Positions 19,905 through 40,921 are shown, counted from the first letter of the stretch. The stretch: 64,000 nt of DNA from Narcine bancroftii (GCF_036971445.1 NW_027211833.1:1-64000), one strand, 5' to 3'. Notes: generated by a model from the letters alone, not told the origin. Program-made: numbers and translations.

Positions 19905-19932
19905 TTAGGGTTAGGGTTAGGGTTAGGGTTAG
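19905..19932 (+). repeat. Short interstitial telomeric repeat (TTAGGG)4TTAG
   Basis: Perfect vertebrate telomere units at a CR1/RTE junction. Confidence 0.9.
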
Positions 19933-21084: not shown

Positions 21085-21755
21085 GTGCATGAATCACAAA
21101 AAGTTGGGTTGCAGGTCCAGCAGGTTACTAAGAAGGCAAATGGATGAATGGCCTTCATCGCTAGAGGAACTGAATTCAAGAATAGGGAGGTTTTGCTTTA
21201 ACTCTACTGGTGAGGTACTGGTGAGGCCATCCCTGGAGAACTGTGCAGTTCTGGTATCTTTCCTCAAGTATAGACTGGCCTTGGAGACAGCCCAGAGGAG
21301 GTTCACCAGGTTGATCCCGGAGAAGAGGGGGTTGACCTACCAGGAGAGACTAAATTGTCTGGGATTATACTCACTTGAATTCAGAAAAATGAAAGATCTT
21401 ATAGAAGCATGTAATATTCTGAAAGGGAGAGATAAGAGAGAGACAGGAAAATGGTTTTCACTGGTAGGGGAGACCAGAACGAAGGGACACAACGTCAAGA
21501 TTCAGGGGAGATTGGGAAAAACTGTTTTTCCCAGAGAGGAGTGAATCTGTGGAATTGTCTGCCCAGGAAAGTGGTTGAGGGGACTTCATTAACCCTAGTT
21601 AAGGTTCAGAATTTGATTTAAAAATGGAATGAAGGGATATGGGGAAAGGCAGGTCGGTGGAGTGGAGTGAATGATCAGATCAGCCACGATCTTAATGAAT
21701 GGCGGAGCAGACTCGACGGGCCGAAGCCCGACTCCTGCTCCTATTGCTTCTGGTC
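21085..21755 (+). mobile_element. CR1 LINE 3' fragment ending just upstream of the Ig-receptor promoter
   Basis: LVRPSLENC..QRRFTRLIP..LGLYSLE followed by a CR1-type 3'UTR. Confidence 0.8.
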
Positions 21756-21949
21756 CATGGGAGGGGGTGACACTCAGCCTAGTGACGCCACCGGTGCTGG
21801 GGAGGTCGAAGTGCTTTCGAAGAGATCCAGTCCTTTCTCTTTCCGACGTGACGCACGGAGAGGCACGAAGCACCGTGGTTCGTTCAGCAGCTCCTTCACT
21901 CAGTTCTTGGCCACTGTCCAGCAGCGCGGTGGAATCGTCCTTCACCAAC
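21756..21949 (+). promoter_or_regulatory. Putative CpG-rich TATA-less promoter/5'UTR of the Ig receptor gene
   Basis: CpG-dense; CRE half-sites TGACG at 21783 and 21849; lies immediately before the ATG. Confidence 0.45.
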
Positions 21950-21995
21950 ATGTCATCAGTTCAACGCTTACTTTCTCAACTCGCTTTTTGTCTGG
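21950..21995 (+). CDS. VJ-C1-ITIM receptor, exon 1: leader (MSSVQRLLSQLAFCL-G)
   Basis: ATG with A at -3, hydrophobic peptide, phase-1 donor G|GTAATT, 96-nt intron to the V exon. Confidence 0.75.
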
Positions 21996-22091
21996 GTAAT
22001 TCAGGAGTTCACTCTTCTTGTTTTGTCATTTCAGGTGTCCCTCCTCAGTGACTTTGTTACTTGACCAGAAACGGGTTATTTTCTGTCGCAG

Positions 22092-22421
22092 GTCTCGCCG
22101 TGGCGCCGAAAGTGATCCAGTCTCCCTCAACGATGACCCTTCTCCGGGGACAGACCGCTCGGATCAACTGCTCCCTGTGGGGCAGGGAGGAGTGGGGGGA
22201 TTCGGCCAGGTATTATTGGTCTCGACACGATTCACCCATCGGCTGCAACCGGTCCCAGGATTTCCTGAAAAACGGACCTCGGCTGACGACAAGGTCGGAC
22301 GGCTCGCTGGTCCTTCTGGACGTGGCCGTGAGTGACGCCGACACTTACTATTGCTGCGTGGTTGCGGATACCAGACCCTGGACAAGGTTGTCAGGAAACG
22401 GAACGCAATTGAACGTTCAAG
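22092..22421 (+). CDS. VJ-C1-ITIM receptor, exon 2: V-set Ig domain with germline-joined J-like strand
   Basis: TTTTCTGTCGCAG acceptor; VIQSP...ARINC...YYW...DADTYYC...SGNGTQLNVQ; donor G|GTAAAG; phase 1-1. Confidence 0.93.
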
Positions 22422-23187
22422 GTAAAGGTGAACTTCAGTCGGTGAACTCTGCCAATGCTCAGCAGAGCCGGGCAGCCGTGGGGCCGGACAACCCAGCCAA
22501 CGTCCCCGATCAGATTCAACCCAACCAGTGTTTTTCCCAGGCAAAGTTACCACCTCTTGGCGGTGCAAAAAACGGTATTTCTGGACACGCGGGCGCTCTC
22601 TCCGTGCGTGGCCTGGCCCGCGGAAGAATCCCCAGTTTGACTTAGGAACCGAGGTCAGCAGATTAACCAACACTGAAACAGTTCCCCGGACAGATCCAAA
22701 AGTCAGTGGACAGCGTGGACCCCCCCCCCCCCCCCCCCCACCACCGCCCCCCCCACCACCCCGCCGCAGAGCTCCACTTGCAGAGAGGTCGCTTTCCCAG
22801 CCCCGACCGGTTAAACACGTTGTTGCCATTGGTAAAGAGTGAAAACTTGCTGGGAAACAAATTTAAAGAAGATGCTGGAAACCCTCAGCATCTGTGGGGA
22901 GAAATGGCTTTTTGAACGTTTCCCATTGAAGCCCAGTCAGAAACTCAAACATTCACCCTGTTTCTTCTCCCGCGGATACGGACGAGGCGGCTGAGTCTTT
23001 CCAGCATCTTCTGCTTTTATTTTGGATTTTCAACTTAAAACAGAATCACCTTGTTCGATTTAATTTCCCATCGGCGCGCTCTTCGAGACCAGACCGAGCA
23101 CCACCGGCCGTTTCTGCCGCAGTTCCTCGCGGTGCCAGTCTCGGTTGGGCCAACATCCACAGCGTGTTATTTTTCCGTTTCATTCAG

Positions 23188-23487
23188 CGAAGCCCGAGCT
23201 CTTGCTCTCTGTGGATCCCAGGGTGAAGGCTGACGGGATTCGGACGCTGAGTTGTGAGGCCACGAGGTTTTTCCCGAGAGATCTGAATATTTCTTGGACC
23301 ATAACGGGCGGTGTCCCCTCCGAAAGCGAAGCGGGACAGCCATCAGTCAACGGGGACGGGACCTACCACCTGACCTCCCGGCTGCGGATCATTGAGACTC
23401 GGCAGGAGCCGGGTCCCGTCGTCACCTGCCACGTTCGGCACGTTACGGGCAATTCGTCGGCGAGCAAAAGTTTCCGTCTCATCCGAG
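23188..23487 (+). CDS. VJ-C1-ITIM receptor, exon 3: C1-set Ig domain
   Basis: TTTCATTCAG acceptor; AKP...LSCEATRFFPRDLNISW...NGDGTYHLTSRL...TCHVRH; donor G|GTAGGT; phase 1-1. Confidence 0.93.
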
Positions 23488-23799
23488 GTAGGTGGTTGAC
23501 AAAAGGATGAAATCCCACAGCCACTTTCTTCCGATTCCTGCTCAAATTTCAAGGGAGATAGAGTAAATATAGAGAAACCATTCGTCAATCTGAAATAGAC
23601 ACGGGGTATAAAGTATCAGGAAAACATCGTCAATGCATCGAATTTTATCCATTAACATTTCTCATAAGAATGATACAGTATTTGGAAATGAATAACTTGC
23701 TGAGATCAGTCCCGAATGGAATCCGAAGCAGAAAGAGGCACTCCCTTTTTACAGAAGCGGATTAATCTGCTAAGAGCTCCATACTTTTCTATTTCGTTT

Positions 23800-26700
23800 C
23801 CCAACTGCCGGTATTTCAGTCTGTAACGAGATTCCGTTTTTAGTTACGGCGTCCCTGCGGAAAACCACCACGAGCTGTGGCAATGGACTGCAAGAAATGA
23901 ATTCACATCAGTGGCCGCGCCACTGGTTTAACATCAAGAGCAGACAAAAACCTCGAATGATGGACTTCTACTGGACCGTCGCACTGTTCAAAGGGGCTCG
24001 TTCCACTTGCTCTTGGTTCCCAGCCCAGATTATTTAGCCACCGTAAACTCCATATTGTTGAATTGAATTCATTTATTCAGCCTTCCTCAAACGACCGGCG
24101 AACCTGGCCGCAATCAGAACCAAACTGCAACCAGTTCAGCCACAGATTCTAGGTGCCGAAGGATTGAAGTATCACGCCAAGTTTCATGATTGATTTCTAG
24201 ACGTGGAGGTCATACAGAGGGAAAGGCGTCGAGAATCGACAGGCAGACGAGAAGACGTCGGGGAAGACCCACAATACACTGCAGCCATGGGCCGAATAGT
24301 CTTTTTCTGTACTGCACTTACATTACTCAGCTTAAAGACCAAACGACATTTAATCGACCGGGAGAATTCTAGATGCTTCAAGCAGCGTGAAAATAAGTGA
24401 GAATATGTTGATGTTCCATGCCAAAACTACGTTTCCAGAGCAAAATGAATTTGTTCCCTGCCAGGTTTTGGCGAGTGAGCTCAATTCTAATGCCAGCGAT
24501 GCGGGGTTTTCGGGTGAGGAGTGACCTTGCCCATTCCGTGGGTTCCGAATGATGGGACTTGTGTGAAGTTCCAGGTCGCCTCGTTCCGTCGCGAGTCACT
24601 CAAGTTTAGTTCATAATAATCTTACAATAACCTGGAAAGGGCCGATCCCCCCATTTCCGAGTGTCTTCTGATCCCAGTTTGGCACAAGTGCATCGTCTTC
24701 AGGTGGCATCAGATGTTCTCTCTCGCTCTGGTCGTCCCCAGATCACTTCTGCAGGGGACCGTTTGGATGGTGCCACTCGCATTTCAAAGAAAGCCAGTGG
24801 GAAGACCTTAAACCAGCTTTGCCCAGTTTCTCCCATGAACTTAGTGATCTTTTTTAGTACTCCATTTGCTCTTTCCTCGAGGCCACCAGCCTGAGGATGA
24901 CGCACACAGTGCTGTTGAATTTTGAAATGACTCCTGATTAATAGTCGCAAGAGAGTGTGGACATTAGGGACATCTGAGCTTATTAACTTAGGCAAACCAA
25001 ATCACGGTATGACTTCCTTGAGTTGTAAAGTCACAGTGGGCTCTGCTGTATTATTGGCTTCAATCCATCTGCTTAAAAAAAGGGACGATATTTATAACAG
25101 ATAATCTATCTGAACGCACTCAATGGGTCGTGAGGGCATAGGCGTCTTCCCTTTGGGTCCTTTCATTGTTTTCCCTGGATGTTTTTTTACAAAGTTCACA
25201 TTCCAACGCGATTCCAATTCCTGTGGCACCCTCGGGTGCCACCATGATTTTTCAACCATTCTTCTCATTCCCTCCTTGTCTGAATGCGCGAGGGCGTGTC
25301 CAGAATTCGAAAGAGTCGGTCACAAGGATTCGGGTCGACAACCTTGAAGAAGGGAAACGCCTGGGTGTCCTTGTTTCCATCAAGCCATTTCCCCATCAGA
25401 GGCTCCCTCGGTTTATTTCGTGCTATTTCCATGTCTGGCATACCCGTCCTATTGATCAGGATTTGTCTCCCTGACGCTAGTCGGCGAGGGCATTTTTAGC
25501 CGCCTTGTCTGCCTCTGCTCCATGGGAGACAGCGTGGGCACTACATTTTATAATAGCCAGCTGTCTTGGTCGCCGAAGGGCACGGAGCAAATGGGTAACA
25601 TAAAGAACATTAGTGATAGGAGCCCCTGCAGACATTAGAAATCCCCGATGTTGCCCTAAAGAACCAAAATCATGGGTTATTCCAAAGGCATTGAGGGGTC
25701 GGTTTAAACATTTCGCTCCTCGCCTTCTCCCAGAATACATGCACGGGTCAGGGCTCCGTCTGTTGCGTTGAAAGTTTTCAAACCTTCCATCCTCCGCCAA
25801 GGTTCCCTCATGGTGATCAATGGCATGACCCTGAGGCACAGAAGAACCGTCTTATGAACCATGTGGTAGCGGAGTATCAAGCAGGTCCTGCCTCCCTGGG
25901 GTCAGGGAGGAATTGGCCTGGATCCAACAGTGGATCCTCCGGTGGATATTGGAGAAAAATGGAAAGATTCATTGGAGAACAACGTCGAAAGTTCAAATTC
26001 GGGTGGTAGAGGAGACTCCTCTGGTATTTACCGAATCTGGCTGCCGTCATGTTCTTGGCGAGGTCAGAATCCATCAAGGCCGTCGCACAGTGGGTCGATT
26101 CTACGGTCATGGGACGACGTCAATGTAGTCCAGGTCGAATCTGGGTCCATGGCTCCCCACGGGGTCTGATCGGACCCGTGCTTTTGGGTGAGTACTGCAG
26201 ACGCGCGATCCTGAATTCTGGTGACATCCAGCTGGAAGACCTGTCAAATAGGGGCCTTCCTATGGCTGGCGCCGAAGAAAGAGCTTCCTTTGGCTCTTCG
26301 AATGGCTGGAGCTCGTCCTGGGTTAGTGTCTGTGGAGCATTCGCTGAAGAAGAAGGATATCAATACTTGTCCATGTGGCCACCCCGGAATTCACTGTCTG
26401 CACAAGTTGATAAGTCCCAGGAAGGGGATATTGGGGACCTGTCCATCCCATGTCTCCTCATCTTCCCTCAGTATGTATTCGGTCTTGATCGTGGCTCCAG
26501 TCCCCGTCCGTCCCCCACCCCACCCCACCTCCTTTTCCAGACGACTCTGGCCAGAACCTTACTCCCGCACGTCTCATCTGATTCAAGTAGCTTTCTGTCC
26601 AATTTTTAAATTCGTTTTTTTTCATGCTCTGCTGTTTAGGGGGTGGGCAGCACATAAGGATCGAAATGAATGAGGCTGCAAGTTCTCCCCTGTAAAAGCG

Positions 26701-27769
26701 CGATCTCCAGCATGCGTTTTATATGTGTCTGCAAACCGGTCGAAATAAGTCTGGAGATCCCCTTGGGGCATTGGTTTGCAGTCTGTTATCTTAGACATGT
26801 TGATAGGCTGCTCAATCATAAAATTAATGCAAATAGGCATCCCAGCATCTCCTCTGTGGGCCTGTGTATCCTTTACTTCTTCCCACCTCTGACAATTCAT
26901 GGCAGTTTTCCAGTTTTTTTTCTGCTGCCATCAATTAAAATATCGTTAGGCCCCACACATCACTGGCTCTGTAATATTCTACTGTCAACGAAGGTGTCAG
27001 GTTGAGTACTTGGGGCTTTGTCTCTAATCAAATACAATTCCTAAGGAATATATGTCCACCTTATCCACCTGATTCGGGTCACCAGCCTGGCAGTTAGAAA
27101 CCGTTCTTATCGGAAGCATCAATCGATCAGGCTCGGTCCGGGCCAGGGGTTTAGTTTTTACTCTTTCCACAGAGGTCACGTCTGCAGCCCCATTATCTTC
27201 CAAGAGAGGGTACAAATCTGGTTCCTGCGCTGGAGGCGGAGGAGCAGCGGTCAGAACTAGTGCAGAAGTGGGTGGGCGTCCCTGGTGTCTCTCTCCCTGA
27301 TTTTTAGTGGTCATTAGGGGTTTCCGGAGACCGAATCTACAGCCTTTTTTACCAACTAATAGTTCATTCGATCATTTTTTCTACCGGTAAGTCTGCTGAT
27401 ACTTTTTTCCGTTTCTCTCTCTCTCTTCTCCTCCCACTTACACTCTGCCTCCAACAATTTCCATTCCTTCATGTTTTTTTCCCACCTTTTTCCTGCATCT
27501 TTTCCCCATATCAACATTTCAGCCTTTTTTATGGTTTCCACATTTCACGTTCCTCCGACTGGCCAGGCCTGATCTCCTAATCTCTTGGTGAACCAATGAC
27601 TCAGAATTTGATTCTTTTTCTACTGGGGTTCCAAATAACACATTATTTGTACTGGTGCTCCCCCGTCACTTTTATCAGGGTCATTTCCCATTTTACCAGT
27701 CTGTCTCTTTTGCATCTACTTCAGGGTATCGACTTTCACGTGGAGGTTTTTCCTCTCTTAACATCCGGT
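23800..27769 (-). mobile_element. Degenerate endogenous retrovirus (gamma/epsilon-like): gag, tether-RNase H, integrase; no recognisable protease/RT
   Basis: Gag start MGND at 27691 and matrix WPVGGT; RNase H AFGITHDFG..RGFL..LAIIKCSAH..ADKAAK; integrase ISSD..HPQAGGLEERANG; GPF motif. The low-coordinate boundary is uncertain. Confidence 0.8.
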
Positions 27770-28497
27770 TGTAATGGAAGATTTAAACCGTGTTTTTTCA
27801 CTTTTACACCCTTTGCTTCTGCAAGGCTGAGAACCTGCTTGTTTTTTAGAATCAGAAAACATAAGCTAATTTACACCATGAGGCCCAGGAAGCATATGAA
27901 TTAGTAGACACATCAAAATTCCACCATGAGGCCTAGAGATGCAGTTTTCTTTTGTTGGTCGCAGACTGTCAGGAGACCTTGAAGGTAATTAAATCATTTG
28001 TTCAAAGGGTTAGGGTTAGGGTTAGGCTATGAAGTAAACAACTTTTGGCTAATATAAGCCATGGTCCCACTGCTGAAGTTTGAGACTCTCCGAGAGGTGT
28101 CAAAATCTCTCAGCAAGAAGAAGAACTTCTAGAGTCCAGCTAACGTCCCGGTCGAGGGAGGTGGAGAAAGTGCAACTGGCGCCCCGACAACCTACTACGT
28201 GTGCAGTTGTTGCCTCTCTTCGGCAGTTAATGATAAGTAGAGTTGGGAAGGGCTAGCATATTGTAGTTTGAAATCAGCTTTTGAATTTGTAATAAACATT
28301 TGTATAAACTGAACTGCTCTCGGTGTGTGTGTCTATTTTCTTTCGGTAGCTCAAACACTGTGACCAATCTAAAGAAAACTGCATCTCTGGGCCTCATGGT
28401 GGAATTTAGCTCATGTCTTCTGATTCTAAAAAACAAGCAGGTTCTCACCCTTGCAGAAGCAAAGGCTGCAAAAGTAAAAAAAAAACACAGTTTAAAA
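27770..28497 (+). mobile_element. LTR family C copy, 3'-truncated and fused to an inverted copy of the LTR 5' end
   Basis: Homologous to 29851-30492; 28373-28497 is the reverse complement of the LTR start. Confidence 0.8.
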
Positions 28498-28499
28498 CA

Positions 28500-28960
28500 C
28501 TGATGAGAAAGTCGAGGATCCAGTTGCAGAGAGGGTTACAAAGGCTCAGAATCTGTGGCTACTTGATCAGCACTGAGGGGATAATGGTGTTGAAGGCCAA
28601 GCTGTGGTCGATGAAGAGCAGCCGTATGTATGAATTATTGTTTTCGAGGTGATCCAGAGCTGAGTGGGGAGCCAGTGATATTGCAGCTGCTGTGGTGGAT
28701 AGGCGGATGGCAGTGGGTCCAGATCTTTGCTTGGGTTTGTGTTAATTCAGCCATGAGCAGCCTCTGAACGCATTTCATCACAGTAGAAGTTAGTGCTACT
28801 GGGCGGTAATTGTTGAGGCAGCTCACACTATTCTTCTCGGGCTCTGGGATGATTGATGCCCCTTTGAAGCAGATGTGAAAATCTGACTGTAGCAATGAGA
28901 GGTTGAAAATGTCCGTGAACACTCCGGCTAGTTGGTTGGCACAGATTTTCAGAACCCTCT
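28500..28960 (-). mobile_element. Rex1/Babar-like LINE fragment
   Basis: FTDIFNLSLLQS...CLNNYRPVALTS. Confidence 0.8.
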
Positions 28961-29850
28961 GGACACAAAGTCTTGGAGAACAGGTTCAGCTTTATTTCGA
29001 GTCTGCAGACTCGGGGTGTCCCTGGTCTGGAGACACACCGGAGGTTCAGAATCATCTCTCCTTTGTACAGTCCTGCGCTCAACATCACCCCACCTTCATT
29101 TACCTTCTTCCAATCAGAATCCCAATACATTACAACATTCTCCTTCTCTCTTCCATCAATTCAGGTATCACTCAGTTCCTCCCTCTTCATACTTCGCATG
29201 TTATGTTAATTAGTTCATTCCCTCCTTAGGGGCGTCTAAGAATATTCATGTCTCAAGCGCAGTAGTAGCTATAGACTACCTTAGGTCACTGTACCAGCCT
29301 GAACCAGATCCTTGCATCCTTGGGGCTCGAGATAAGAAGGGGCCCACTAGCTAGTACTGTCTACTCTCAAGCTCTAATCTACACACTTTGCATTCCATCA
29401 CTTTTCACAGGATGGTGCGATTAGTCACTTTCAACCATTTTTCACACTGCGAACCAGAGTGGCATTCGCAGCAGTGGCTGTTCACGGCCCACTACTCTTC
29501 TCCCCCCCCCCCCCCTCCGTGGCAGCGACCTCTCTCCCGCCGATTGTGGGACCGCACCCAATTGTGGCCCCCCCTCTCTTCACACCCCCCCCCCACCCCC
29601 CGCAACCCCTCTCACCCCCTGATCGTGGCAGGCACTTCAGCCAGGGGTTTCCCTGTGATGCCAGTGTGCAACTGCTGACGTCACAGGAGTAACCAGGTCA
29701 GCCATTTTCCTGTTCAAGTTGCCGTTGGACACGACCTTGTTAAGTTTAACTGGGTTCTCTGACTACCTCTGAGGCAGGTCAGGGACTTGGTTGGATTTGG
29801 ACCACGCTGACTGGGTCAGACCTTTTCAAGCTGCCACATGAGTGGGGCAT

Positions 29851-30492
29851 TGTAATGGAAGATTTAAACTGTGTCTTTTACTGCAAGGCTGAGAACCTGT
29901 GTGGAATCTAAATTCCACCATGAGCCCAGGATGCATATTTAGTAAACACCCACCCATGGGGCCTCGGCTGCAGTTGAATAGGAAGACATGATCTAATTTA
30001 CACTTCTGAGGCCCAGAGCAGTTTACATTTGTTGGTCGCAGACTGTCAGGAGACCTTGAAGATAATTAAACCATTTGTTCAGAGAGATAAGTTTTGAGGT
30101 AAACAACTTTTGGGGTGATATGAGCCAAGGTCCCACTGCTGAAGTGAGAGACTCTGGAAGAGGTGGCTACATATCTCAGCAAGAAGAAGAACTTCTAGAG
30201 TCCAGCTAACGTCCCGGTCGAGGGAGGTAGAGAAGCTGCTACCGGCACCCCGACAACCTACTACAAGTGTGCGGTCGTTGCCTCGCTTCGGCAGTTGGGA
30301 CCAGTCCAGGCGTTGATAAGTATAATTGGGAAGGGCTTGCATATTGTAGTGTGAATTCAGTTTTAGATTTAGTAATAAAGACTTGTATAAACTGAACTGC
30401 TCTCGGTGTGTGTGTCTATTTTCTTTTGGTAGTTCGAACACTGTGACCAATCTAAAACGAACAAAGTGAGAGGTATAAGTTTACCCAAGACA
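29851..30492 (+). mobile_element. Solo LTR, family C
   Basis: TGTAATGG...CAAGACA ends, AATAAA, flanks GGCAT/GGCAC; sits inside a short palindromic element (about 29820-30550). Confidence 0.75.
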
Positions 30493-32124
30493 GGCACTAA
30501 CCGGGCAAATTGCCTGGTTAACCCCATTTTACATGGCAGTTTGAAAGGGCCTAATGATGGTGCTCGACCTGCTGAGTTTCTCCAGCAGGTTGTGGTTGGC
30601 TTCAGATTCCAGCATCTGCAGTCTCTTGTGTGTCTCCAATCCCATGAATATGATCACCAGATTCTTGGTGCATTATTCCAGGAAATACCTCTATTTTTGT
30701 ACCAAAGCTGCAACCAACTTTTGAGATAAGAGCACTCTATATAAGACAAATCCCTTGATGAAGGGATCAAGTCCAAAACATTAGGGTATCTCTATCTTTG
30801 CTATATAAAGGACAGTTTGACCTGCTGACTTTCTTCAACATTGTGTTGTAACTTCAATCACAGTTTCTGCAAGACTTTATGTTTTACTTTATACAAGAGT
30901 TGGATTTGCTCCAAACAGTTCATTTGAGGAAAATGCTTAGCTATTATTAATAACATTAAGAAACCAGTTCACATTCGTTGGTCCACCTCATGTTTGCAAG
31001 AAATTATGAACAAATGTAGCATCGGATAGATTCTATTTTTTTTCAATCAGCTTGCTTAGGATGAGCTCCAATTCTAGCTATCAATCAATCAAATTGATTA
31101 AAGTGAAATCTCCAATGTACGTAGAAAAAGACAGTTGAAGTTTCTTGGCAAATACTGATACACTATCAGATGGTTGACATTTATGCTTTGATCCAAATCA
31201 AAAATAGCACAAAACATCCTAAGAGGGTAAACTGGTCATTTTTTAAAAACAGCTCAGTCGTAACAGCAAATCACTTGGAACAATGCTTAAACAACAACAA
31301 ACAACAAAGCAAGACCTTTTAAGCATTAAAATAATTCTACCCAAAGAATGCTGGTCATGCTGATCTTTGACATTTCCCGACCGAAGGGCTTGGTCCTGCC
31401 TGGGAGCCCGAGTGCGAGGTCTGCCTGCTGCTGTCTCTGGGGACCCAAGGTTCACTGCTGTCGCCACCACGGCTGGGCGCCTGACATCCCTGGTCACTGG
31501 CTCTGAAACATTTTTGGATAACGGAGAATCCAATTTCGGATAATTAATACTCGGAGAATTTTTCCACCCTGCAAACAACATTTTTCTAACCTTTGTGAAA
31601 TGTTTGACTTTTCAAAGAAAACTTGGTAATTCATCACACCAAACCATGGTAATTTGCAACACTCGGAACAAATGATGGACACAGAACATAGCTCAGGAAC
31701 GAGCCCTTCAGCCCATAATGTCTCTGTTTATTGATCATGATGAAACTTAAACTAAATCTCTTCTGTCTGTACACAACACATATCCTTCAATCACTGGACA
31801 TTCATAGATCTATCGAGAAGCTTCTAAAACATTACTATTGTCTTTATTGTGGGTGGCATCTTTCCTGTCACAATAGTTCTCATGAACAATAAGTGTGTTT
31901 TTCTCTTCTGATTCCATCCATTCTTTAAGGATTGTTTGGATAAATAAGATATGGAATGATTATCTAGGTTTACTGCTATGCAAGTGGAACTATTTTTGAC
32001 ATGGTGTGTAATTTCTGCCAAGTGAATCCAATTGACAACTTTAATGAGAAAAAAAATTCAGAGAATGTAGATTTAAATCTATGTTTTAAAAAATGTACAA
32101 TGTATTGTAACGTGCATTGAAATT

Positions 32125-32320
32125 AAATTTAGACATACAGTATGGTAACAGGCCATTTTGGCCCACGAGTCAGTGCCACCCAATTTACACCCCCGGTATG
32201 TTTTTAATGGTGGGAGGAAACCCACACAAACATGGGAAGAATAAACAAACTACAGACAGCGTGGGATTCAAACCCCGGTCCTGATTGCAGGCGCTGTAAA
32301 GGCATTGTGCTAACCACTGG
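32125..32320 (-). mobile_element. tRNA-derived SINE
   Basis: Reverse strand AGTGGTTAGCAC...GGGTTTGAATCCC (A/B boxes). Confidence 0.7.
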
Positions 32321-32428
32321 TTCGTACCCCTCTGGTTTTTACCTCTCTGTTTCAACACCAATGTTATGGACATGTTTGCATTTCTTTGCAACATAATTTT
32401 GATTCACATTTCCTTGGTATTTTTGAAG

Positions 32429-32530
32429 GATTCTCCAAGTATTATTTTGTTCTGTTGGGACTTACCTTCATTGTACCATTATGCCTCTGGATTATTTCTA
32501 ATCGATACAGTAAATTGAAGAATGGAGAAG
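32429..32530 (+). CDS. VJ-C1-ITIM receptor, exon 4: transmembrane (GFSKYYFVLLGLTFIVPLCLWIISNRYSKLKNGE)
   Basis: TATTTTTGAAG acceptor, 20-aa uncharged hydrophobic run then basic residues, donor AAG|GTAATC; phase 1-1. Confidence 0.8.
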
Positions 32531-32789
32531 GTAATCATATACATTGTCCATTTTACTTCATAATTGACAAAAACTGAGCAATATCAAAAAGGAAAATTGC
32601 ATTTAGTTCCTGGGGGGAGGGGGGAACGGGGACGGGGGCGGGGGGGGGGAACGACAACAAAACCGTCATCAGACAAGTGAAAATCAATTTTAAATTTGAC
32701 ATTCAGCCATTTTTCTCTACAGGATATATTAATATAGCCTGTAAATTAAAATAGTTACACCAAAGGAAATGAAGTTCGATGTTCCATTT

Positions 32790-33385
32790 CAAATGTTTTT
32801 ATTGAGTTATATATATGCTCATTCATGGGTAATAATAAAAATATACAACAAAGTCAATGTATATTAATATATAGCTATAAAAGCAACCTATGAAAGGGAT
32901 AAAAACAAAAAATATATATGTAAAGCAAAAGTTATTCTCATGTTCTAACCCCTCCCTTGTGATGATTAAACATAAACACTCCATTAATATATGAAAGAAA
33001 GGACCACTAAACGATAAAATGGGATCCAATAAACATAAATTCTGAAAATAATCAAGGAAAGGGCCCTGTAAATTTAAAAAGTTAAATTTCATTACATGAG
33101 TAGAGCACCTAATTTTTTTCCAGAGTCAAGCATGCCATCATATTAGGTAACATCCTTCCATCTCATAAGTATAACTCTTCCAGCAATACATGGGATTGTA
33201 GCCCAGACAAATTTAAATCAGCTGACTTACTTACTTCAAATAGGGCAAGAAAAGGACTAGGAACCAAATTAAAATTAAGAACTAAAGACAAAGTGCAGAA
33301 GATACTTTCCCAATTACTGGACAGCAAGGAACATAACCAAAGCATATGAAATAATGTACCTTCTTCAGTCTAAGCTAAGATGTTT
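32790..33385 (-). mobile_element. L1-like LINE 3' remnant
   Basis: AT-rich, resembling an ORF2 C-terminus (GTLFHMLWLC-like); AATAAAAAACATT-type end. A similar remnant lies at about 9885-10295. Confidence 0.5.
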
Positions 33386-33601
33386 ATATGAGAAAATTAA
33401 CACATCTAAACATATATAGTTAAGCGTTCAATTAAGCCCAACATATCTTTCAAGTGTAGATGATGAAAATGGATTAAAATGGCAATGGTGATACTTATTA
33501 GCATCTAAATGTTGTCTAAATATTTCCCTTCGCTTACTGCTAAGTGCATATATTTGTTCTCCAAGGCTGAGATGCTTCTAATATTCATGATATTTTTATA
33601 G

Positions 33602-33672
33602 AATCACCAGGCCATGTCAAAAATATCGGTAATCAAACAACAAGAAAATGGGTGAAAGACTCAGTCAATAAA
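33602..33672 (+). CDS. VJ-C1-ITIM receptor, exon 5: cytoplasmic (ESPGHVKNIGNQTTRKWVKDSVNK)
   Basis: ATTTTTATAG acceptor, consensus GTAAGT donor, open frame; converts phase 1 to phase 0 as needed to reach exon 6. Confidence 0.7.
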
Positions 33673-35090
33673 GTAAGTATATTTCTTTGTTATTTTCTCC
33701 CATGCTCATGTTCCCAGCCTCCGAAGTACTGAATGTACAGAAAGTGCTGTCAGTTGAGTTGAATACATTTATCAGCATTTTTCAACATGAAGCACTGAGA
33801 ACAGAAAGGGGAGAATATGTAGAGTCAGTTGGGTGGAATCTATCTCAACTCTCTGATAGTTAGCAAATGTCTGAGCAGAGTAGATTGAAGACTTCTGAAT
33901 GAGATCAGATTACGAGGACTTGGGCTCCCCAACTTTCCTTCTAGTATTAGTTGATACTGGAGTCTGTAAAATGTTCTGGCAATGTGACAGGTGTGGGAAA
34001 CTAATTTATTTTAATAGAAGGAGTATAACTATTCACAAAGATACATTTAAACTTTTAAAAAACCTAGGGCTCTGTGATATTGCTCACAAATTAAACAAAC
34101 CCAATCTGCTGCATATGGTCCATCCCCTTCATTCCCTGCCTCTCCATGCGCTGTTCTTAATGTTTCTTAAATTTGCTACCATGCATCCAGGCATCTCTCG
34201 CTCTCTCTGTAAAACACATCTTTAAATGTTCCCCCTTTCACCGCAAATCAATAGCCTCTGGTGTGAATATTGGTCATTTTTGGTAAATGCTCCAATAACT
34301 TGATTGAAATTCACTCAACCGATGCATTTGAAGTTGGAGATAGGAGGTTGGCAGTGGAGGCAGAGGGTCATATCTTCCTATTTATAAATCTATTTATTTA
34401 TTTGCTTGTTTGTTTTCACATTTTTCGGCCTTCAGCCACATGTTAACATATCACCCATTGAGGAATATTCCCAGAAATTATGTCTTAGGTTTTAGACTTG
34501 TTGATAGCTAATCAGCCAGCATGTATCGTATTTGCAGCTGAAGCCGCCAGCACCAGCTTAGCCAATATCTGTTGAAATCCTGTGGTTTTTCAAAATACGC
34601 TTCTAAAATCTCAGCATATGCAAATTTTCACAACTCTCAAGAGTTACGTGAATTTCAATTTGTATTTTATTCTCACTATAAAAACCCTTGACAAAGTAAT
34701 GCTTGTTGAATAAGGAGCAACTTCAAGAGCTGTTAAAATAATTTTAAAAATACTTTTTCTTATTCTGGCTCTTGTTCTATTCTCTTTGCACTGCTTTCTG
34801 AACATTATAAAAAGTGAACAACAAAGCCTGCTTCTCACTTTGTGCATTTTAAGCAAAATTCTGCAATAAATTTAGCTTTTTTGCCTGTTTAGTCCTTCTA
34901 GTGACAAGAAAGTGAAATGTATGTTCTAGAACTCACTTGCTCAGTAAGTCGACCTTTTGCGATCCGTGGTGTGCAATTGCTTTGTCATTTTTCAAAATCA
35001 ATTCAGTTGCCAATGACCGGTTGAAAAAGAAACGCTATTATTGCTTTGCATCAGATACTAGTCTTTTAAAATAAATATTCCAGTGTGTAA

Positions 35091-36070
35091 TGTTATAAGT
35101 CCAGAGGATCCCAAAACCCAGCAGCAATATGTGAGAAACAGAATTACCTTCACAGAATTTGCTCGAGACAAAAATTGAGGACAAAGAACTTTTATTCTAC
35201 TATTTCAACAATGCAAAGTTGGGGGCTTCCCCTTACCCTGGGAATACACACAGATACTGAGGCTGACCCAACTTTTATACATTTCATTTCAGCACAGAGA
35301 TACCTTCCCCCCAACATTCTTCTGCCTCCTGGATTGGTTTAGCATTAGGTAATTCCGCCCACGTGGATTCTAACTTCTTATCAGTTTACGTGCCTTCCTG
35401 CAAACTTGTTAGCCGGGAAATATCATGTCTTTGTTCTTTAGTCATTAATCAATCCCCAAGACTTGCTAAATCTATTTACTTGCTATCCTGTTTTAAAGAT
35501 CCTTATTTTATTATACTTTTATAACCCTTCCTAACCCTTCCTCCCATTCTAGCATCCCTTCACCCTAAATTAACCCATAATACTTCATCCTTAATTTGCA
35601 CTTGCTTGACTCCTCACATTCCAGTATCCCTTACAAATAGGTATGTACCACGACAAAGGGTTACTTAAATAAAAGTTACTTATAATTATCTTTGAACATG
35701 AAAATAGAATCAAATTTTAACTTATCTCCATTAACTCACTTAACCCTCTTCTAATTTTAAGTGCACATGCGTATAATGTGTGTGTAAGTTCAGCAAAGTT
35801 CTTTGGATCACAGTCCAATCTCACTGGTTGCAGGCAATTCTTGTACTGTGCACAGAAGTTAACATTAATAAAGTTCACCAGGCTTTGGTGCTTAACAGGT
35901 AAATGGTTACCACTTAGAAAGGTTCTTGTTGGTTTTCAGAGAGTTTTTCTTGTTTCAGGTCATCAGAGTTCCTTTCTGTTTCTCCTATTCCAAGGGAAAC
36001 ACCAGACAGCCAGTCCTCTCCTTTGACCAGGCCATCTTCCAAAGCTTGCCAGGGTGTGTATGTTTGTCTG

Positions 36071-36113
<43 letters not shown>

Positions 36114-36366
36114 CCCCCCAACTCTGAGAGCAAAGCCTCTTTTTCTTCTGCTCTCTGCCTGCAAAGATCACATGACCTTCCAGACAGTAAGTTCTGTTTT
36201 CCAGATAAAGCTGTTACATTTGATGCCTTTTCATACAGTCCATGAGTCTGTGAGCATCTTGCAAAAGCTCCTACAAAAATTCTGTGTTTTGAAGTGTTTG
36301 TGTGTGACCTGCTCAAACAAACCTTTCCCAATTTATCTCCCAAACACCTCGGTATTCTCTGTCACA
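35091..36366 (-). mobile_element. Solo LTR, family B, carrying a nested family A LTR
   Basis: TGTTA...GTCACA ends, perfect 4-bp TSD GTAA; homologous to 40922-42240. Confidence 0.85.
35130..35635 (-). mobile_element. Solo LTR, family A, nested in the family B LTR
   Basis: TGTGAGA...CTTACA ends, perfect 4-bp TSD AATA; homologous to 10739-11331. Confidence 0.85.
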
Positions 36367-36615
36367 GTAAAATGACCCCCAAAAATGCACCAATTAAATG
36401 AGAATGTTTGCTTCATGATTCACAAACTTCAGATTATGTTGATTATTTTATTTTACTACATTCGGAAGAAGCCCAGTTCTGTGTGTTTTCTTTTACAAAC
36501 TCATTTTTCTCTCTTCTACTCCTGAAGAGATTTAAAAGTATGGAGAATAATTCCATGGTCTCAGTGGTTTCCATATTATTTACTCAGATGTTTTTTCTTT
36601 AAATGTTAGTTCAGG

Positions 36616-37663
36616 CAAGCGCTGAAGAGCTGGCTCTGAATGGGCAACTAAAGCGGCATCGTCTGCAAAGAGTAGTTCACGGATAAATTTCTCTTGTGTC
36701 TTGGTGTGAGCTTGCAGGCGCCTGCTTTGCGGAAACTGCCAAAATGCTTGGCCTGGAAGTCAGCCTGAAGAAAACTGAGGTCCATCAGCCAGCTCCCCAC
36801 CATGACTACCAGCCCCCCCACATCTCCATCGGGCACACAAAACTCAAAACGGTCAACCAGTTTACCTATCTCGGCTGCACCATTTCATCAGATGCAAGGA
36901 TCGACAATGAGATAGACAACAGACTCGCCAAGGCAAATAGCGCCTTTGGAAGACTACACAAGAGTCTGGAAAAACAACCAACTGAAAAACCTCACAAAGA
37001 TAAGCATATACAGAGCCGTTGTCATACCCACACTCCTGTTCGGCTCCGAATCATGGGTCCTCTACCGGCATCACCTACGGCTCCTAGAACGCCTCCACCA
37101 GCGTTGTCTCCGCTCCATCCTCAACATCCATTGGAGCGCTTTCATCCCTAACGTCGAAGTACTCGAGATGGCAGAGGTCGACAGCATCGAGTCCACGCTG
37201 CTGAAGATCCAGCTGCGCTGGGTGGGTCACGTCTCCAGAATGGAGCACCATCGCCTTCCCAAGATCGTGTTATATGGCGAGCTCTCCACTGGCCACCATG
37301 ACAGAGGTGCACCAAAGAAAAGGTACAAGGACTGCCTAAAGAAATCTCTTGGTGCCTGCCACATTGACCACCGCCAGTGGGCTGATATCGCCTCAAACCG
37401 TGCATCTTGGCGCCTCACAGTTTGGCGGGCAGCAACCTCCTTTGAAGAAGACCGCAGAGCCCACCTCACTGACAAAAGGCAAAGGAGGAAAAACCCAACA
37501 CCCAACCCCAACCAACCAATTTTCCCCTGCAGCCACTGCAACCGTGTCTGCCTGTCCCGCATCGGACTTGTCAGTCACAAACGAGCCTGCAGCTGACGTG
37601 GACTTTTACCCCCTCCATAAATCTTCGTCCGCGAAGCCAAGCCAAAGAAGAAGAAAGAAGAAG
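36616..37663 (+). mobile_element. RTE-clade LINE with 5' inversion
   Basis: 36616-36720 is antisense RTE, the remainder sense; TSD AGTTCAGGCAA at 36608-36618 and 37664-37674. Confidence 0.92.
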
Positions 37664-38339
37664 AGTTCAGGCAATGAACTTTAAAAGGCTGTTTGATCAA
37701 AGTAAATATCTTAGTCAAGCCTGATCATCCAAATTTTTGCACAGAAAATTACCAAGAGTGCAGTTTTCACCTCTTGATAATTTTATGTACACAAAACAGG
37801 AGGAAAATGTGTGGGAAATAAAATGGCTGTTTATCTTGCCCTTTTGCTGGTGGTCAGATAAAAGTTCACATTCAATCCTAGTGTTCAGACGAGCACCCAG
37901 AGGAAGCACAACTGTTTAGGGTGCAAATGCTACTTCGTAGATTTGTGATAAAATGTTTTTTTTTAAACAGAAGTCACTCCAAACCTGCTCCTTAATTTAG
38001 AATGCTGACCCTCAAGTAAATTGTTTCGTCTTAGCTGGTGCGACATGCAAATCATGGAATAAAAAGTGGAATTGGCATGGATTAATAAACTCTAGGTGAT
38101 AACTTTCCCCGGAGTCCATTTCTGACTATGTAGCAGGAGAATGTGAATGGGGAGAATTTGCTTTTTAAGCAAATCAGCTCAAGGTCTGATCAGTTCACTT
38201 CAGCAGACTAAACTGCCAGCACTGAAATCTCAGGTTCTAGCAAACTTGGTTTGAGAAGATAGAATACAATGGGTTGACCATTTTTAAAGACAAGACAGGA
38301 TTCCTTTTTCTAGAATGACCTATATGAACCCAGAAGTAA

Positions 38340-38810
38340 ATCACAAAATTCTGTAGACTTTGTGGGGTTGAACTAAAAGCACAAAGTGTTGGAGAAGCTC
38401 AGCAGGTCGAACAGTGTACAGTCCCACCCAAAACACCCCGAGATTGGAGGAATAACACCTTATTTTCTGTCTGGCCCCCTCCACCCAGATGGCATGAACC
38501 TCGACTTCACTGCTTTTGATTAAACCTGTCTGCCTTTTCTTTCCCCTGCTCCCTTTTCCTGTCTTTCCAGTTATTTTACCCACACACCCCATCCCCCTCC
38601 ACCCCATTGATGCTGTCCCCTCTCTCCTTTCTCCATCATCTGCCTTCCTCCTCCTCCTCCTCCCCCCCCTCCCATTTTGTTTGGGTTTGCTGGCATTCTC
38701 TCATACTTTGAAGGGCTCAAGCCAGAAATGTCCATTGCCTATCTTTGTCTTTGCTACATAAAGGACACTGTTTGACCTACTGACCTTCTCCAGCTTTTTG
38801 TGTTTTTATT
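38340..38810 (+). mobile_element. Penelope-like terminal fragment
   Basis: GAGGAATAACACCTTATTTTCTGTCTGG...GAAGGGCTCAAGCC...TTGACCT pattern shared with 42550-43260. A further remnant lies at about 39780-40320. Confidence 0.55.
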
Positions 38811-39108
38811 TCTATGAACCTCGAGTACACGGGTCTCCAATGCAGCTGCAACTTGAAACTGGTTAACGAGGAGGGGCATCAGCTGGCACATGATCAATGA
38901 ATTCAATGAAATGAAAATCAGCCAGACTGGGACAAACACTGCTGGATGACTAACTCACCCACATACAGTTTGTCACTGCCCATTGAGTGTTGCTGTTCAA
39001 ATTGGTTACTGCCATTTCCACATGGCTTTGCAGCATAAATCAAGGAGAGCATATTTATGCCACATTTGCAAGCATATCTTCTGACTATTTGTTGTTTTTG
39101 TGTTGCAG

Positions 39109-39264
39109 GATAAAGCTTCTCTAAGGGATGAAACTCTGCAATATGCATCTGTTAAGTTTAACAATCCTCCAAAGGGAACTCAAAAACAGAATTTGAGAAC
39201 ACCAGAGGAAACCTTTGCAAAAGAATATGCTGTTTTAAAGGTCAAAGATAAAAATAATCTATGA
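39109..39264 (+). CDS. VJ-C1-ITIM receptor, exon 6: terminal exon with ITIM and ITIM-like motif
   Basis: Strong acceptor GTTGTTTTTGTGTTGCAG; phase 0; DKASLRDETLQYASVKF...AKEYAVLKVKDKNNL*. Confidence 0.85.
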   Translation, partial: DKASLRDETLQYASVKFNNPPKGTQKQNLRTPEETFAKEYAVLKVKDKNNL

Positions 39265-40921
39265 AGAGCCTGTACATACTACCACAGTTAGCATTTGCAC
39301 CACATCAAATAGAATATAAACAGCTAATTACCATACAACCACAAATTCCTCTCTAAAGCAATTTATATAAGACCTGAGAAACCAAAATGAAAGAAGGTGC
39401 CATGGCTTCCAAAATCTATTCCTCCATTCAATATGGTCTTGGCCAATATCATATGTCCAGCTCAGTTCATACATCTGCTAATTTCCAAAAGATCAGATAA
39501 GTGAGAAGAAGTGAGCAATTTGGCTCCACCATTCCATCATGAGCTGATCCATTCTCCCACTCCCCTTCTCCTGACTTCTCCCACTCCCCTTCTCCTGATA
39601 ACCTTTGATACACTGACTATTCAGGTAGGACTCAAAACCTAGAACTCAACAACTGAATTTTGAGGTAGAAAATTTCAAAGATTTACAATCTGTTTTGTCA
39701 ATGTCTTTCTTTCTATCTCAATTCATAATGACTGACTCCATATCTTGAATCTAGTGGTGGACTCTCCAGCAAAAGGAATTTGCCAGGCACCTATGCTTTT
39801 ATGTAGGTCAAAACTTGAGCTTCATATAGCCAACCATTTTAAGTCTACCATTTGTACAGTGACACATCAGTCTTTGGCCTCATCCATTGTCAGGGTGAGG
39901 ATAGAAGTAAACCTGAGGAACAACACAGCATATTCCTCATGGACATCAATAAACCTAACGAACTGAACATTGATTTTTTTTCTAACTTTGAGTAACACCC
40001 ACCCTCATCTGATTCCATTGTTTCAATTTCTTCTTACCCAGTACTCAATTTTTTCACTCTCTTTACCTTTTCTTCCCCTCCATGTTTTCTCCGGCCTGTC
40101 CCTCTCTATACCTTCTGACCCATACCCTATCACCTCTTCCCAGCTTCTTTCCCCCCATACATGTGTAATTTTACTTTTTTATCTTGATCTTGATATAGGA
40201 TTTTGACTCAAAAGGTTATCTGCCCATTCTACTCGTGGATGATCCCTGACCTGCTGAGTTCCTCCAGCAATTCTTTGACTGAGCAAGATTCCAGCATTTG
40301 CAGCTTTTGTGTTTCTCATCTTTTGGTATCTGTCCTGTTTCTTTCTCTCAGGAGCTCATCTTTCATTCTGCCAAATACACATGAGTAAAGACTCAATCTC
40401 CCTTCATTGGGCCACTCCTTCCTCCCAAGAATTAATTTAGTGAATCTATGATGGACTGACTCTGAGGTCGATTTAAACCTTCTTTGATAATCAAACTAAG
40501 TGGTTCAAATGTTGTTTTAAGGTCATAAGACGAGCTCACTTTTGCACTCCAACCTCCTTGCAATGAAGTCCAGTTTCCCATCTCAGAAATCAATGGCACC
40601 AATACTTTTCACACAAATGATTTTTAGCTTCTGTGCATTTTAAAAAAAATTGGCCAAGGATTTATTGTCCCTTCCGTCCTTATCAACATGACCTATTCAG
40701 CACCATTCCCCGTCTCACCTTCCTGCACCTGAACACATCTTTATGTAGCAGTTTTTGGTAGTGATGTTGGCTCTGACCTGGTCAGTAAAGACCTGTGCAA
40801 CATAAACCTCTTCAGCAAATTCAGGTATCTGGGGTGCAGGATTAAATCAGCCCTGACCACAGGAATGTTTTGACAGCCATCCAAGCATGTGCACAGGAAA
40901 AATCAGCAATTTTAAACACCT

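What the first reader, a model, noticed from the sequence alone, without database searches (positions are those of the whole stretch)
21950..39264. Intact non-rearranging VJ-C1 antigen-receptor-like gene with an inhibitory tail
Seen: six exons (21950-21995, 22092-22421, 23188-23487, 32429-32530, 33602-33672, 39109-39264) join via GT-AG introns with phases 1,1,1,1,0 into a stop-free 334-aa type I membrane protein: leader-V(J)-C1-TM-cytoplasmic tail. The ORF track shows only pieces of it. Known: C1-set domains are largely confined to Ig, TCR, MHC/b2m, tapasin, SIRP and some B7/nectin-like proteins, and a single VJ plus a single C1 is the TCR/IgL chain layout. Inference: this is a germline-encoded inhibitory receptor with the ectodomain layout proposed for the pre-RAG antigen-receptor ancestor. 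It would be comparable to SIRP-like and non-rearranging VJ-C1/PRARP-type genes, but may be an undescribed cartilaginous-fish family.
Basis: partly seen in the sequence, partly recalled or inferred. Interest (0 to 1): 0.92.

Follow-up and report, generated by a model that had tools for sequence, protein, structure and literature searches.

The report
SIRP-like inhibitory V-C1 receptor gene
This is a real, expressed gene of the lesser electric ray for a non-rearranging "off-switch" immune receptor with one variable-type and one constant-type antibody domain. It belongs to a shark-and-ray family that databases already hold under SIRP-like automatic names, so it is a useful but not unprecedented find.

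Summary
All six exons, GT-AG introns and phases are as stated and give 334 codons. RNA contigs from two runs show junctions 21995|22092 and 22421|23188. A 29-letter overhang at 23488 is exactly the start of the TM exon at 32430, so C1 is spliced to TM.

The organism is Narcine bancroftii. RefSeq model XP_069768453.1 ("uncharacterized protein") uses the same five junctions but differs at both ends.

The protein has one-per-species relatives in at least 11 elasmobranchs. NCBI names them inconsistently: SIRP-beta-1-like, SIRP-alpha-like, Ig-kappa-like, TCR-beta-like.

SIRP-alpha D1-D2 is the best non-antibody colinear V-C1 match and the top Foldseek hit for the V model. Antibody chains, VNAR and TCR V score as well or better.

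An invariant ITIM (LQYASV), a second YAxL and an uncharged TM indicate an inhibitory receptor. Pristis and Mobula also have Arg-in-TM, short-tailed twins, the paired-receptor pattern.

In Narcine a frameshift cuts off the distal tail, and the ectodomain has evolved fast. One RNA junction (22421|33602) skips C1 and TM, predicting a soluble V-only form.

Orthology to tetrapod SIRP and MHC linkage could not be tested. The scan has already followed up a similar gene elsewhere in this genome (s1-877676).

Verdict: new member of a known kind.

The parts
21833..21949 (+). Minimal 5' UTR. It holds no ATG before 21950.
   Evidence: The spliced RNA contig X1 record 1 starts at 21833. Sequence read.
21950..21995 (+). 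Exon 1: start codon and most of the signal peptide (MSSVQRLLSQLAFCL), phase 1.
   Evidence: Joint 21995|22092 in X1 and X2. Orthologues begin here.
22092..22421 (+). Exon 2: V-set domain with a germline-joined J-like G strand (YYCC...SGNGTQLNVQ).
   Evidence: Pfam V-set E 3.7e-10. AF2 model pLDDT 85. Foldseek top hit is SIRP-alpha D1, tied with VNAR and TCR V-alpha. Joint 22421|23188.
23188..23487 (+). Exon 3: C1-set domain carrying the FFP, YxLxSxL and CxVxH hallmarks.
   Evidence: Pfam C1-set E 1.6e-12. PDB hits. The modelled domain matches almost only C1-set domains, Z 7.3-9.1.
23488..32428 (+). Intron 3 (8.9 kb), swollen by retroelement fragments.
   Evidence: ORFs with integrase- and RT-like pieces. 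The RNA overhang at 23488 equals 32430-32458.
32429..32530 (+). Exon 4: stalk, uncharged transmembrane helix (YYFVLLGLTFIVPLCLWII) and stop-transfer residues.
   Evidence: 56-74% identical to orthologues. Helix 315-341 in the model of P0001.
33602..33672 (+). Exon 5: membrane-proximal cytoplasmic segment, ending in phase 0.
   Evidence: Colinear with P0001 and orthologues. Its acceptor is used in RNA.
39109..39264 (+). Exon 6: cytoplasmic tail with both tyrosine motifs, ending in TGA at 39262-39264.
39136..39153 (+). ITIM LQYASV. The tyrosine is invariant in the eight aligned family members.
   Evidence: Invariant Y380, A381 and V383.
39220..39237 (+). Second motif KEYAVL, with its tyrosine 28 residues after the first. 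Y, A and L are invariant. Position -2 is Lys here but Thr or Ser in relatives.
39261..39364 (+). Remnant of the ancestral distal tail, now out of frame and holding a stop. Sharks keep two more Tyr motifs here (VxYSxV, TxYxSL).
   Evidence: tblastn of the Scyliorhinus and Hypanus tails hits 39239-39364 in the shifted frame. Alignment.
41180..41254 (+). Alternative last coding exon used by the RefSeq model (MNELGRLG...FLCV*), reached from a donor after 39240. Not checked against RNA.

Best explanation
The stretch is a single-copy, expressed gene of Narcine bancroftii. It encodes a type I membrane glycoprotein: signal peptide, a non-rearranging V domain with a built-in J-like strand, one C1-set domain, an uncharged transmembrane helix, and a cytoplasmic tail with an ITIM (LQYASV) and a second YAVL tyrosine 28 residues later.

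It is the inhibitory member of an elasmobranch-wide, SIRP-like family of V-C1 receptors. In other rays this family also has activating twins, with Arg in the TM and a short tail.

**Inferred mechanism.**
1. The V domain binds a cell-surface or pathogen ligand that is still unknown.
2. Src-family kinases phosphorylate the two tyrosines.
3. A tandem-SH2 phosphatase (SHP-1 or SHP-2) docks on them and damps activating signals in the same cell.
4. TM-less splice forms may act as soluble decoys.

**Shown here:** gene structure, splicing of exons 1-4, domain types, conservation of the motifs, and family membership.

**Inferred only:** phosphatase recruitment, the ligand, the cell type, and the role of the soluble form.
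For: - **Structure and splicing:**, with the overhangs placed.
- **Domains:** Pfam V-set and C1-set above their cut-offs. The C1 model matches C1-set folds. The V model has pLDDT 85, and its top Foldseek hit is SIRP-alpha D1 at E 1.3e-8.
- **Gene model and family:** RefSeq model P0001 is 100% identical over the exons. Relatives at E 1e-64 to 1e-126 occur in Mobula, Hypanus, Pristis, Heptranchias, Hemiscyllium and Stegostoma; Scyliorhinus was found and the profile search adds Mustelus, Heterodontus and Cetorhinus.
- **Conserved motifs:** the ITIM Tyr and the second Tyr are invariant in A1, and the TM carries no charge.
- **SIRP likeness:** the family profile aligns colinearly with SIRP-alpha D1-D2 (68.5 bits), including GTELSVRAKP against gtelniqakP, and with D3 (41 bits). 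The nearest language-model clusters are SIRP-alpha-like (0.96).
- **Paired forms:** P0094 (Pristis) and P0107 (Mobula hypostoma) have near-identical ectodomains, an Arg in the TM and short tails. Each groups with the inhibitory form of its own lineage.
- **Soluble forms:** the V-to-exon-5 junction in Narcine RNA, and RefSeq isoforms that skip the TM exon in Heptranchias and Heterodontus.
Against: - No functional data exist for any member of the family.
- Junctions 4|5 and 5|6 and the 3' end were not seen in reads.
- The second motif has Lys at -2 in Narcine, so it fits neither the ITIM nor the ITSM consensus.
- The Narcine ectodomain branch is about five times the median (0.63 against 0.13), and the distal tail is frameshifted. 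Both could mean relaxed constraint.
- SIRP likeness is not exclusive. Antibody Fab chains score 84-100 bits in one V-C stretch against the same profile. VNAR and TCR V tie with SIRP in the fold searches. The single-sequence V search ranks TCR, IgL and VNAR first.
- A tail-only search found no tetrapod SIRP, though that search is word-limited.
- Intron depth is roughly 40% of exon depth in the runs, so they hold much unspliced RNA or DNA.
Confidence: 0.75

Rival explanations
1. It is a true orthologue or co-orthologue of tetrapod SIRP-alpha. It binds a CD47-like "self" marker, and the single C1 is the ancestral state or results from loss of one C1.
For: - NCBI names several orthologues SIRP-alpha-like or SIRP-beta-like.
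- SIRP-alpha is the best non-antibody colinear V-C1 match.
- SIRP-alpha D1 is the top Foldseek hit for the V model.
- The nearest language-model clusters are SIRP-alpha.
- The family has paired inhibitory and activating forms, as SIRP-alpha and SIRP-beta do.
- Shark members carry four tail tyrosines in two pairs. From my memory, not from a tool, SIRP-alpha has the same arrangement.
Against: - There is one C1, not two. The second C1 in Hypanus and Mobula is a recent near-identical duplicate.
- Antibody chains, VNAR and TCR V score as well or better.
- No tail homology to tetrapod SIRP was detected.
- Neither synteny nor a reference phylogeny is available.
Confidence: 0.3
2. It is a relic of the non-rearranging VJ-C1 lineage that gave rise to Ig and TCR chains (PRARP-type or UrIg-type). 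On this view it is closer to antigen-receptor chains than to SIRP, and its SIRP-like features are shared ancestral traits or convergent.
For: - The V-C unit of antibody chains scores higher than SIRP-alpha D1-D2 against the family profile.
- TCR, IgL and VNAR lead the single-sequence V search.
- A skate IgNAR V is the top VIA-align hit (Z 13.7, rmsd 1.5).
- NCBI names some members Ig-kappa-like or TCR-beta-like.
- UrIg2 tops the summed-score list.
Against: - The UrIg2 rank comes from summing three C1 domains. Its best stretch (57 bits) is below that of SIRP-alpha.
- There is no stalk cysteine for an interchain bond and no charged TM residue.
- An N-glycan sequon (GNGT) sits in the J-like bulge, where Ig and TCR V domains pair.
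- Linkage to the MHC or the antigen-receptor complex is untested.
- No PRARP sequence was at hand to compare.
Confidence: 0.12
3. The Narcine copy is decaying: a transcribed gene on its way to becoming a pseudogene.
For: - Long terminal branch of 0.63 against a median of 0.13.
- Identity to sharks is 46-53% in V, against 62-71% for Pristis.
- The distal tail is frameshifted with a further stop.
- The second motif has Lys at -2.
- The gene lies on an unplaced, retroelement-rich 95-kb scaffold.
Against: - The reading frame is open across six exons, with canonical splice sites.
- All core Ig residues, the ITIM and the TM are kept.
- Spliced contigs are deeper than introns.
- The lost distal tail had already lost its tyrosines in other batoids, so the truncation removes little.
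Confidence: 0.1

Closest known systems
SIRP family (SIRP-alpha inhibitory, SIRP-beta activating) of tetrapods
   Same: - Non-rearranging V with a J-like strand followed by AKP and a C1-set domain.
- Uncharged TM with tyrosine motifs in the inhibitory form.
- Basic-TM, short-tailed twins with near-identical ectodomains.
- Best non-antibody sequence match and top Foldseek match.
   Different: - One C1 instead of two.
- Two tyrosines in Narcine and four or five in sharks. SIRP-alpha's four is from my memory, not from a tool.
- No detectable tail homology.
- Ligand unknown and orthology untested.
- The activating twins use Arg. SIRP-beta's Lys is also from memory.
UrIg and UrIg2 (non-rearranging shark antibody-like genes; PMC12227049, PDB 9dmx)
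   Same: Elasmobranch, germline-joined VJ followed by C1-set domains. Top summed score in the PDB searches.
   Different: - UrIg proteins have three or more C1 domains (nine in nurse shark UrIg2) and form disulfide-linked dimers.
- The best single stretch is weaker (57 bits).
- This gene has one C1 and an ITIM tail.
Ig light chains and TCR chains
   Same: V(J)-C1 layout. V-C profile scores of 84-100 bits in one stretch. The V model resembles TCR V-alpha and VNAR.
   Different: - No RSS and no split V/J.
- No interchain cysteine and no charged TM residue.
- Its own ITIM tail.
- A glycan sequon in the J-like bulge.
[quoted passage not shown] 2019, cited in PMC10751288)
   Same: Non-rearranging IgSF genes with a VJ domain, listed with SIRP and NKp30 among VJ-type genes (PMC11599192, PMC10751288).
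   Different: Could not be compared. The paper is not held and no PRARP sequence was available from any tool.
Skate MDIR and teleost NITR paired receptors
   Same: Paired activating and inhibitory innate receptors with V-type domains in fishes. ITIM tails in the inhibitory members.
   Different: From my memory, those families have no C1-set domain. None of them appeared among the sequence or fold hits.

Membership tests
C1-set immunoglobulin domain | Match to PF07654 above its gathering score, and a C1-type fold | tested here: met
   48 bits against a cut-off of 21. Model residues 207-298 match almost only C1-set domains, Z 7.3-9.1.
VJ-type (germline-joined) V domain | V-set domain whose G strand carries GxGTxLxV in the same exon, with no RSS | tested here: met
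   GNGTQLNV lies inside exon 2. Pfam V-set E 3.7e-10. No heptamer-spacer-nonamer anywhere in the window.
ITIM-bearing inhibitory receptor | (S/I/V/L)xYxx(I/V/L) in the tail and an uncharged TM | tested here: met
   LQYASV at 39136-39153, with its Tyr invariant in the eight aligned family members. The TM YYFVLLGLTFIVPLCLWII has no charge. The second motif KEYAVL misses the consensus at -2.
ITIM-bearing inhibitory receptor | Phosphotyrosine-dependent recruitment of SHP-1, SHP-2 or SHIP | not testable with these tools
   Needs biochemistry.
SIRP family | Ectodomain of V followed by two C1-set domains | tested here: not met
   There is one C1 exon only, and no second C1 anywhere in the window. Hypanus and Mobula carry a recent duplicate C1.
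SIRP family | Closest sequence and structure relatives are SIRPs | tested here: inconclusive
   SIRP-alpha is the best non-antibody colinear hit and the top Foldseek hit. Antibody chains, VNAR and TCR V tie with it or exceed it.
SIRP family | Paired inhibitory and activating members with near-identical ectodomains | tested here: met
   Met for the family: Pristis P0094 and Mobula P0107 have Arg in the TM and short tails. No such exon exists in this window, and a Narcine partner was not looked for elsewhere.
SIRP family | Conserved synteny with the tetrapod SIRP cluster, or a supported clade with SIRPs | not testable with these tools
The window holds only retroelements besides this gene. No reference sequences of SIRP, TCR, IgL or PRARP were obtainable as ids.
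SIRP family | Binding of CD47 | not testable with these tools
   Needs a binding assay.
Rearranging antigen-receptor chain (IgL or TCR) | V and J split by RSS, an interchain cysteine, and a charged TM or secretion | tested here: not met
   V-J is one exon without an RSS. The stalk SFRLIRGFSK has no Cys, and the TM is uncharged.
UrIg / UrIg2 | VJ plus three or more C1 domains, linked to the MHC or the antigen-receptor complex | tested here: not met
   Single C1. The best stretch to 9dmx is 57 bits. Linkage is not testable.
PRARP | Sequence relationship to chicken PRARP genes | not testable with these tools
   The paper is not held and no sequence was available.

The most novel reading that the evidence does not exclude
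The elasmobranch V-C1 family is not a SIRP orthologue. It is a surviving membrane-bound, non-rearranging sister of the Ig light-chain and TCR lineage: a minimal VJ-C1 receptor of the kind the RAG transposon invaded. On this reading SIRPs derive from such a gene by C1 duplication, which would make this family a direct living model of the pre-RAG receptor.
Probability: 0.12. Interest if true: 0.8.

Novelty: new member of a known kind. Interest (0 to 1): 0.45.

Why it matters
SIRPs have long been proposed as relatives of the antigen-receptor precursor because they combine a VJ-type V domain with C1-set domains (PMC2785349). That proposal rests on tetrapod genes.

This finding adds a conserved, expressed V-C1 receptor family with paired inhibitory and activating forms in sharks and rays, the oldest jawed vertebrates with Ig, TCR and MHC. 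It is as similar to antibody and TCR chains as to SIRP.

It therefore gives a concrete gene set for testing whether the minimal V-C1 membrane receptor is ancestral, and where it sits relative to the MHC and its paralogons.

For genome annotation, it shows that the RefSeq model has a doubtful N-terminal extension and 3' end. It also shows that the family's automatic names are inconsistent across species.

Tried and rejected
- **Joined exons.** Exons were searched one by one by reference, and the RefSeq protein P0001 returned stood in for the spliced product.
- **Whole-protein model.** AlphaFold of all of P0001 was poor (pLDDT 44). I used only its C1 part. The V exon was refolded alone (pLDDT 85).
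- **Tail-only search.** A search with the Scyliorhinus TM and tail found only family members. The search is word-limited, so this is not evidence against SIRP homology.
- **Profile search.** A profile search of the 5.8-billion set found only elasmobranch members. Only 8000 candidates were scored, so again nothing can be concluded about tetrapods.
- **Activating exon.** A search for an activating-type TM exon in the window found nothing.
- **RSS search.** Nothing found.
- **Other Ig exons.** tblastn of the exons against the window found no second V or C1.
- **Reference tree.** Only a within-family tree was made.
- **Papers.** The PRARP and first UrIg papers are not held.
- **Reads.** Reads were laid on exons 1-3, so junctions 4|5 and 5|6, the stop at 39262 and the RefSeq 3' exon remain unchecked against reads.


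Full report
**1. The observation**

I read all six exons and their borders.
- Each exon is preceded by AG and followed by GT.
- The lengths 46, 330, 300, 102, 71 and 156 nt give phases 1,1,1,1,0 and 334 codons before TGA at 39262-39264.
- Exon by exon, the translations are:
  - a hydrophobic leader;
  - a V domain ending DADTYYCCVVADTRPWTRLSGNGTQLNVQ;
  - a C1 domain with FFP, YHLTSRL and CHVRH;
  - a stalk plus the uncharged helix YYFVLLGLTFIVPLCLWII;
  - two cytoplasmic exons.
- Pfam gives V-set E 3.7e-10 and C1-set E 1.6e-12, both above the curated cut-offs.
The spliced product is represented by protein P0001, which a tool returned.

**2. Independent support for the gene model**

An exhaustive HMMER search with the V exon found P0001 at 100% identity. 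P0001 is RefSeq XP_069768453.1, "uncharacterized protein", from Narcine bancroftii, on a 94,978-bp contig.

It differs in two places.
- **Start.** It begins at an upstream in-frame ATG (21695), adding 85 residues before the leader.
- **End.** It leaves exon 6 at a GT after 39240 for a small exon at 41180-41254.

**3. RNA evidence**

Four runs of one study hold the stretch. Their contigs were laid on 21700-27600.
- Spliced joints with GT..AG ends occur at 21995|22092 (X1, X2) and 22421|23188 (X1).
- The loose end at 23488 is letter for letter window 32430-32458, a unique match. The C1 exon is therefore spliced to the TM exon 8.9 kb away.
- A second loose end at 22421 equals 33602-33628. This in-frame junction runs from V straight to exon 5, skips C1 and TM, and predicts a secreted V-only product.
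- The spliced contig starts at 21833, and there is no ATG between there and 21950. All orthologues also start at the leader.
- Introns are covered at about 6x against 14-27x for exons. The runs thus also hold unspliced RNA or DNA.
- Junctions 4|5 and 5|6 and the 3' end were not covered by my single reads call.

**4. The family**

- Word-indexed searches found one close relative per species (Scyliorhinus came):
  - batoids: Mobula, Hypanus, Pristis;
  - sharks: Heptranchias, Hemiscyllium, Stegostoma, Scyliorhinus, Mustelus, Heterodontus, Cetorhinus.
- NCBI's automatic names vary: SIRP-beta-1-like, tyrosine-protein phosphatase non-receptor type substrate 1-like (that is, SIRP-alpha-like), Ig-kappa-light-chain-like and TCR-beta-like.
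- The alignment is colinear from leader to tail. Invariant positions include both Ig cysteine pairs, the V tryptophan, D-x-D-T-Y-x-C, G-x-x-T of the J-like strand, AxP at the V-C1 hinge, the TM Cys, and both tail tyrosines (LxYAxV and YAxL).
- Sharks carry two further motifs (VxYSxV, TxYxSL) and a YEE motif.
- In Mobula, Hypanus and Pristis the two distal tyrosines are already replaced by Asn or Phe.
- In Narcine a frameshift right after KDKNNL brings in TGA. The old tail is still recognisable out of frame, with another stop.
- The family tree places Narcine with the batoids (82/50). Its terminal branch is 0.63 against a median of 0.13. Every region except the TM is more diverged than in Pristis.

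**5. Paired and soluble forms**

- Pristis P0094 and Mobula hypostoma P0107 have ectodomains almost identical to the inhibitory forms of their lineage. They end in a TM with an Arg (VIVRHFIIVVG, FILRAVIITVG) and a short tail.
- On the tree these two sit next to their inhibitory counterparts. That is the pattern of paired receptors such as SIRP-alpha and SIRP-beta.
- No such exon lies in this window.
- RefSeq isoforms of Heptranchias and Heterodontus skip exactly the TM exon. TM-less products therefore recur in the family, in line with the Narcine V-to-exon-5 junction.

**6. Comparison with known families**

- **Sequence against solved structures.**
  - The family profile aligns colinearly with human SIRP-alpha D1-D2 (68.5 bits, including GTELSVRAKP) and with D3 (41 bits).
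  - UrIg2 leads only by summing three C1 domains; its best stretch is 57 bits.
  - Antibody Fab chains reach 84-100 bits in a single V-C stretch.
  - The V exon alone ranks TCR, IgL and VNAR first.
  - The C1 exon alone ranks UrIg2, IgH and SIRP-alpha.
- **Structure.**
  - The V-exon model (pLDDT 85) has SIRP-alpha D1 as its top Foldseek hit (E 1.3e-8), tied with VNAR and TCR V-alpha.
  - A skate IgNAR V is its top VIA-align hit (Z 13.7, rmsd 1.5, 92 aligned).
  - The C1 part of the whole-protein model matches almost only C1-set domains, all within one Z unit.
- **Language-model atlas.** The nearest clusters are SIRP-alpha-like (0.96).
- **Conclusion.** "SIRP-like" is the best functional and architectural label, but the ectodomain is about equidistant from SIRP and antigen-receptor chains.
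- **Features that argue against an Ig- or TCR-type paired chain.**
  - No RSS.
  - No stalk cysteine.
  - No charged TM residue.
  - An N-glycan sequon (GNGT) in the J-like bulge.
  - Its own ITIM.

**7. Literature**

- SIRP-alpha's V-C1-C1 structure was presented as a link to antigen-receptor evolution (PMC2785349).
- SIRP, PRARP, NKp30, CD8, CD79 and NITR are listed as joined-VJ genes (PMC11599192).
- UrIg and UrIg2 are the described non-rearranging elasmobranch VJ-C1 genes (PMC10751288, PMC12227049).
- Searches for SIRP together with cartilaginous fish or elasmobranch terms found no description of this family.
- Earlier notes of this scan record several VJ-C1-TM genes elsewhere in this genome. 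One follow-up (s1-877676) reached the same SIRP-like reading for another gene. Another note flags a paired VJ-C1 system (s1-878354).

**8. Verdict**

- The gene is a new member of a known kind: a non-rearranging, SIRP-like, paired V-C1 receptor. It is already present in RefSeq as an unnamed model.

Noticed in passing
window 23538 joined to 29617: An X2 contig reads from intron 2 through exon 3 into intron 3, and at 23538 continues with letters identical to 29617-29646. That skips 6,078 nt inside intron 3. The ends are not GT..AG. It may be an allele without the retroelement-rich insert, or an artefact.
   Followed up: partly
window 22421 joined to 33602: RNA junction from the V exon directly to cytoplasmic exon 5, in frame. 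It predicts a secreted V-only isoform of about 200 aa.
   Followed up: partly
window 4673-5983 (-), 15052-16656 (+), 19630-20307 (-), 36696-37596 (+), 53739-54200 (-): At least five copies or fragments of one LINE-type retroelement, with near-identical protein text. The ORF at 15052-16656 matches Pfam RVT_1 at E 5.7e-33. One copy lies in intron 5 of the receptor gene.
   Followed up: partly
window 2615-3943: A 1.3-kb minisatellite of a C-rich 20-mer (68 copies, 92% matches). It accounts for the 68% GC and strong skew of that bin.
   Followed up: no
window 17001-17356: A 39/117-nt tandem repeat that reads as long repetitive ORFs on both strands (SSPTETF...). It is unlikely to be coding.
   Followed up: no
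window 22727-22760: A poly-C tract in intron 2. Contigs break there (notes that reads seem cut at 22712-22771).
   Followed up: no
window 22235-22250 and 22351-22356: The Narcine V domain has two extra cysteines (IGC in the C'-C'' region, and the second C of YYCC) that most orthologues lack. They could form an extra intradomain disulfide, as some shark and camelid V domains do.
   Followed up: no
P0049 (Narcine XP_069786759.1, another chromosome): A three-VJ-domain receptor of the same species has a tail with IHYADV and TEYAVI motifs. This tail aligns weakly with exon 6 of this gene, so the tail module may be shared among elasmobranch VJ receptor families.
   Followed up: partly
P0053 (Pristis XP_051870431.1): A distinct V-C1-TM gene lies on the same Pristis chromosome-sized contig as the orthologue of this gene. 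It is the next-best V-C1 match to the family profile (125 bits), which hints at a cluster of V-C1 receptor genes.
   Followed up: no
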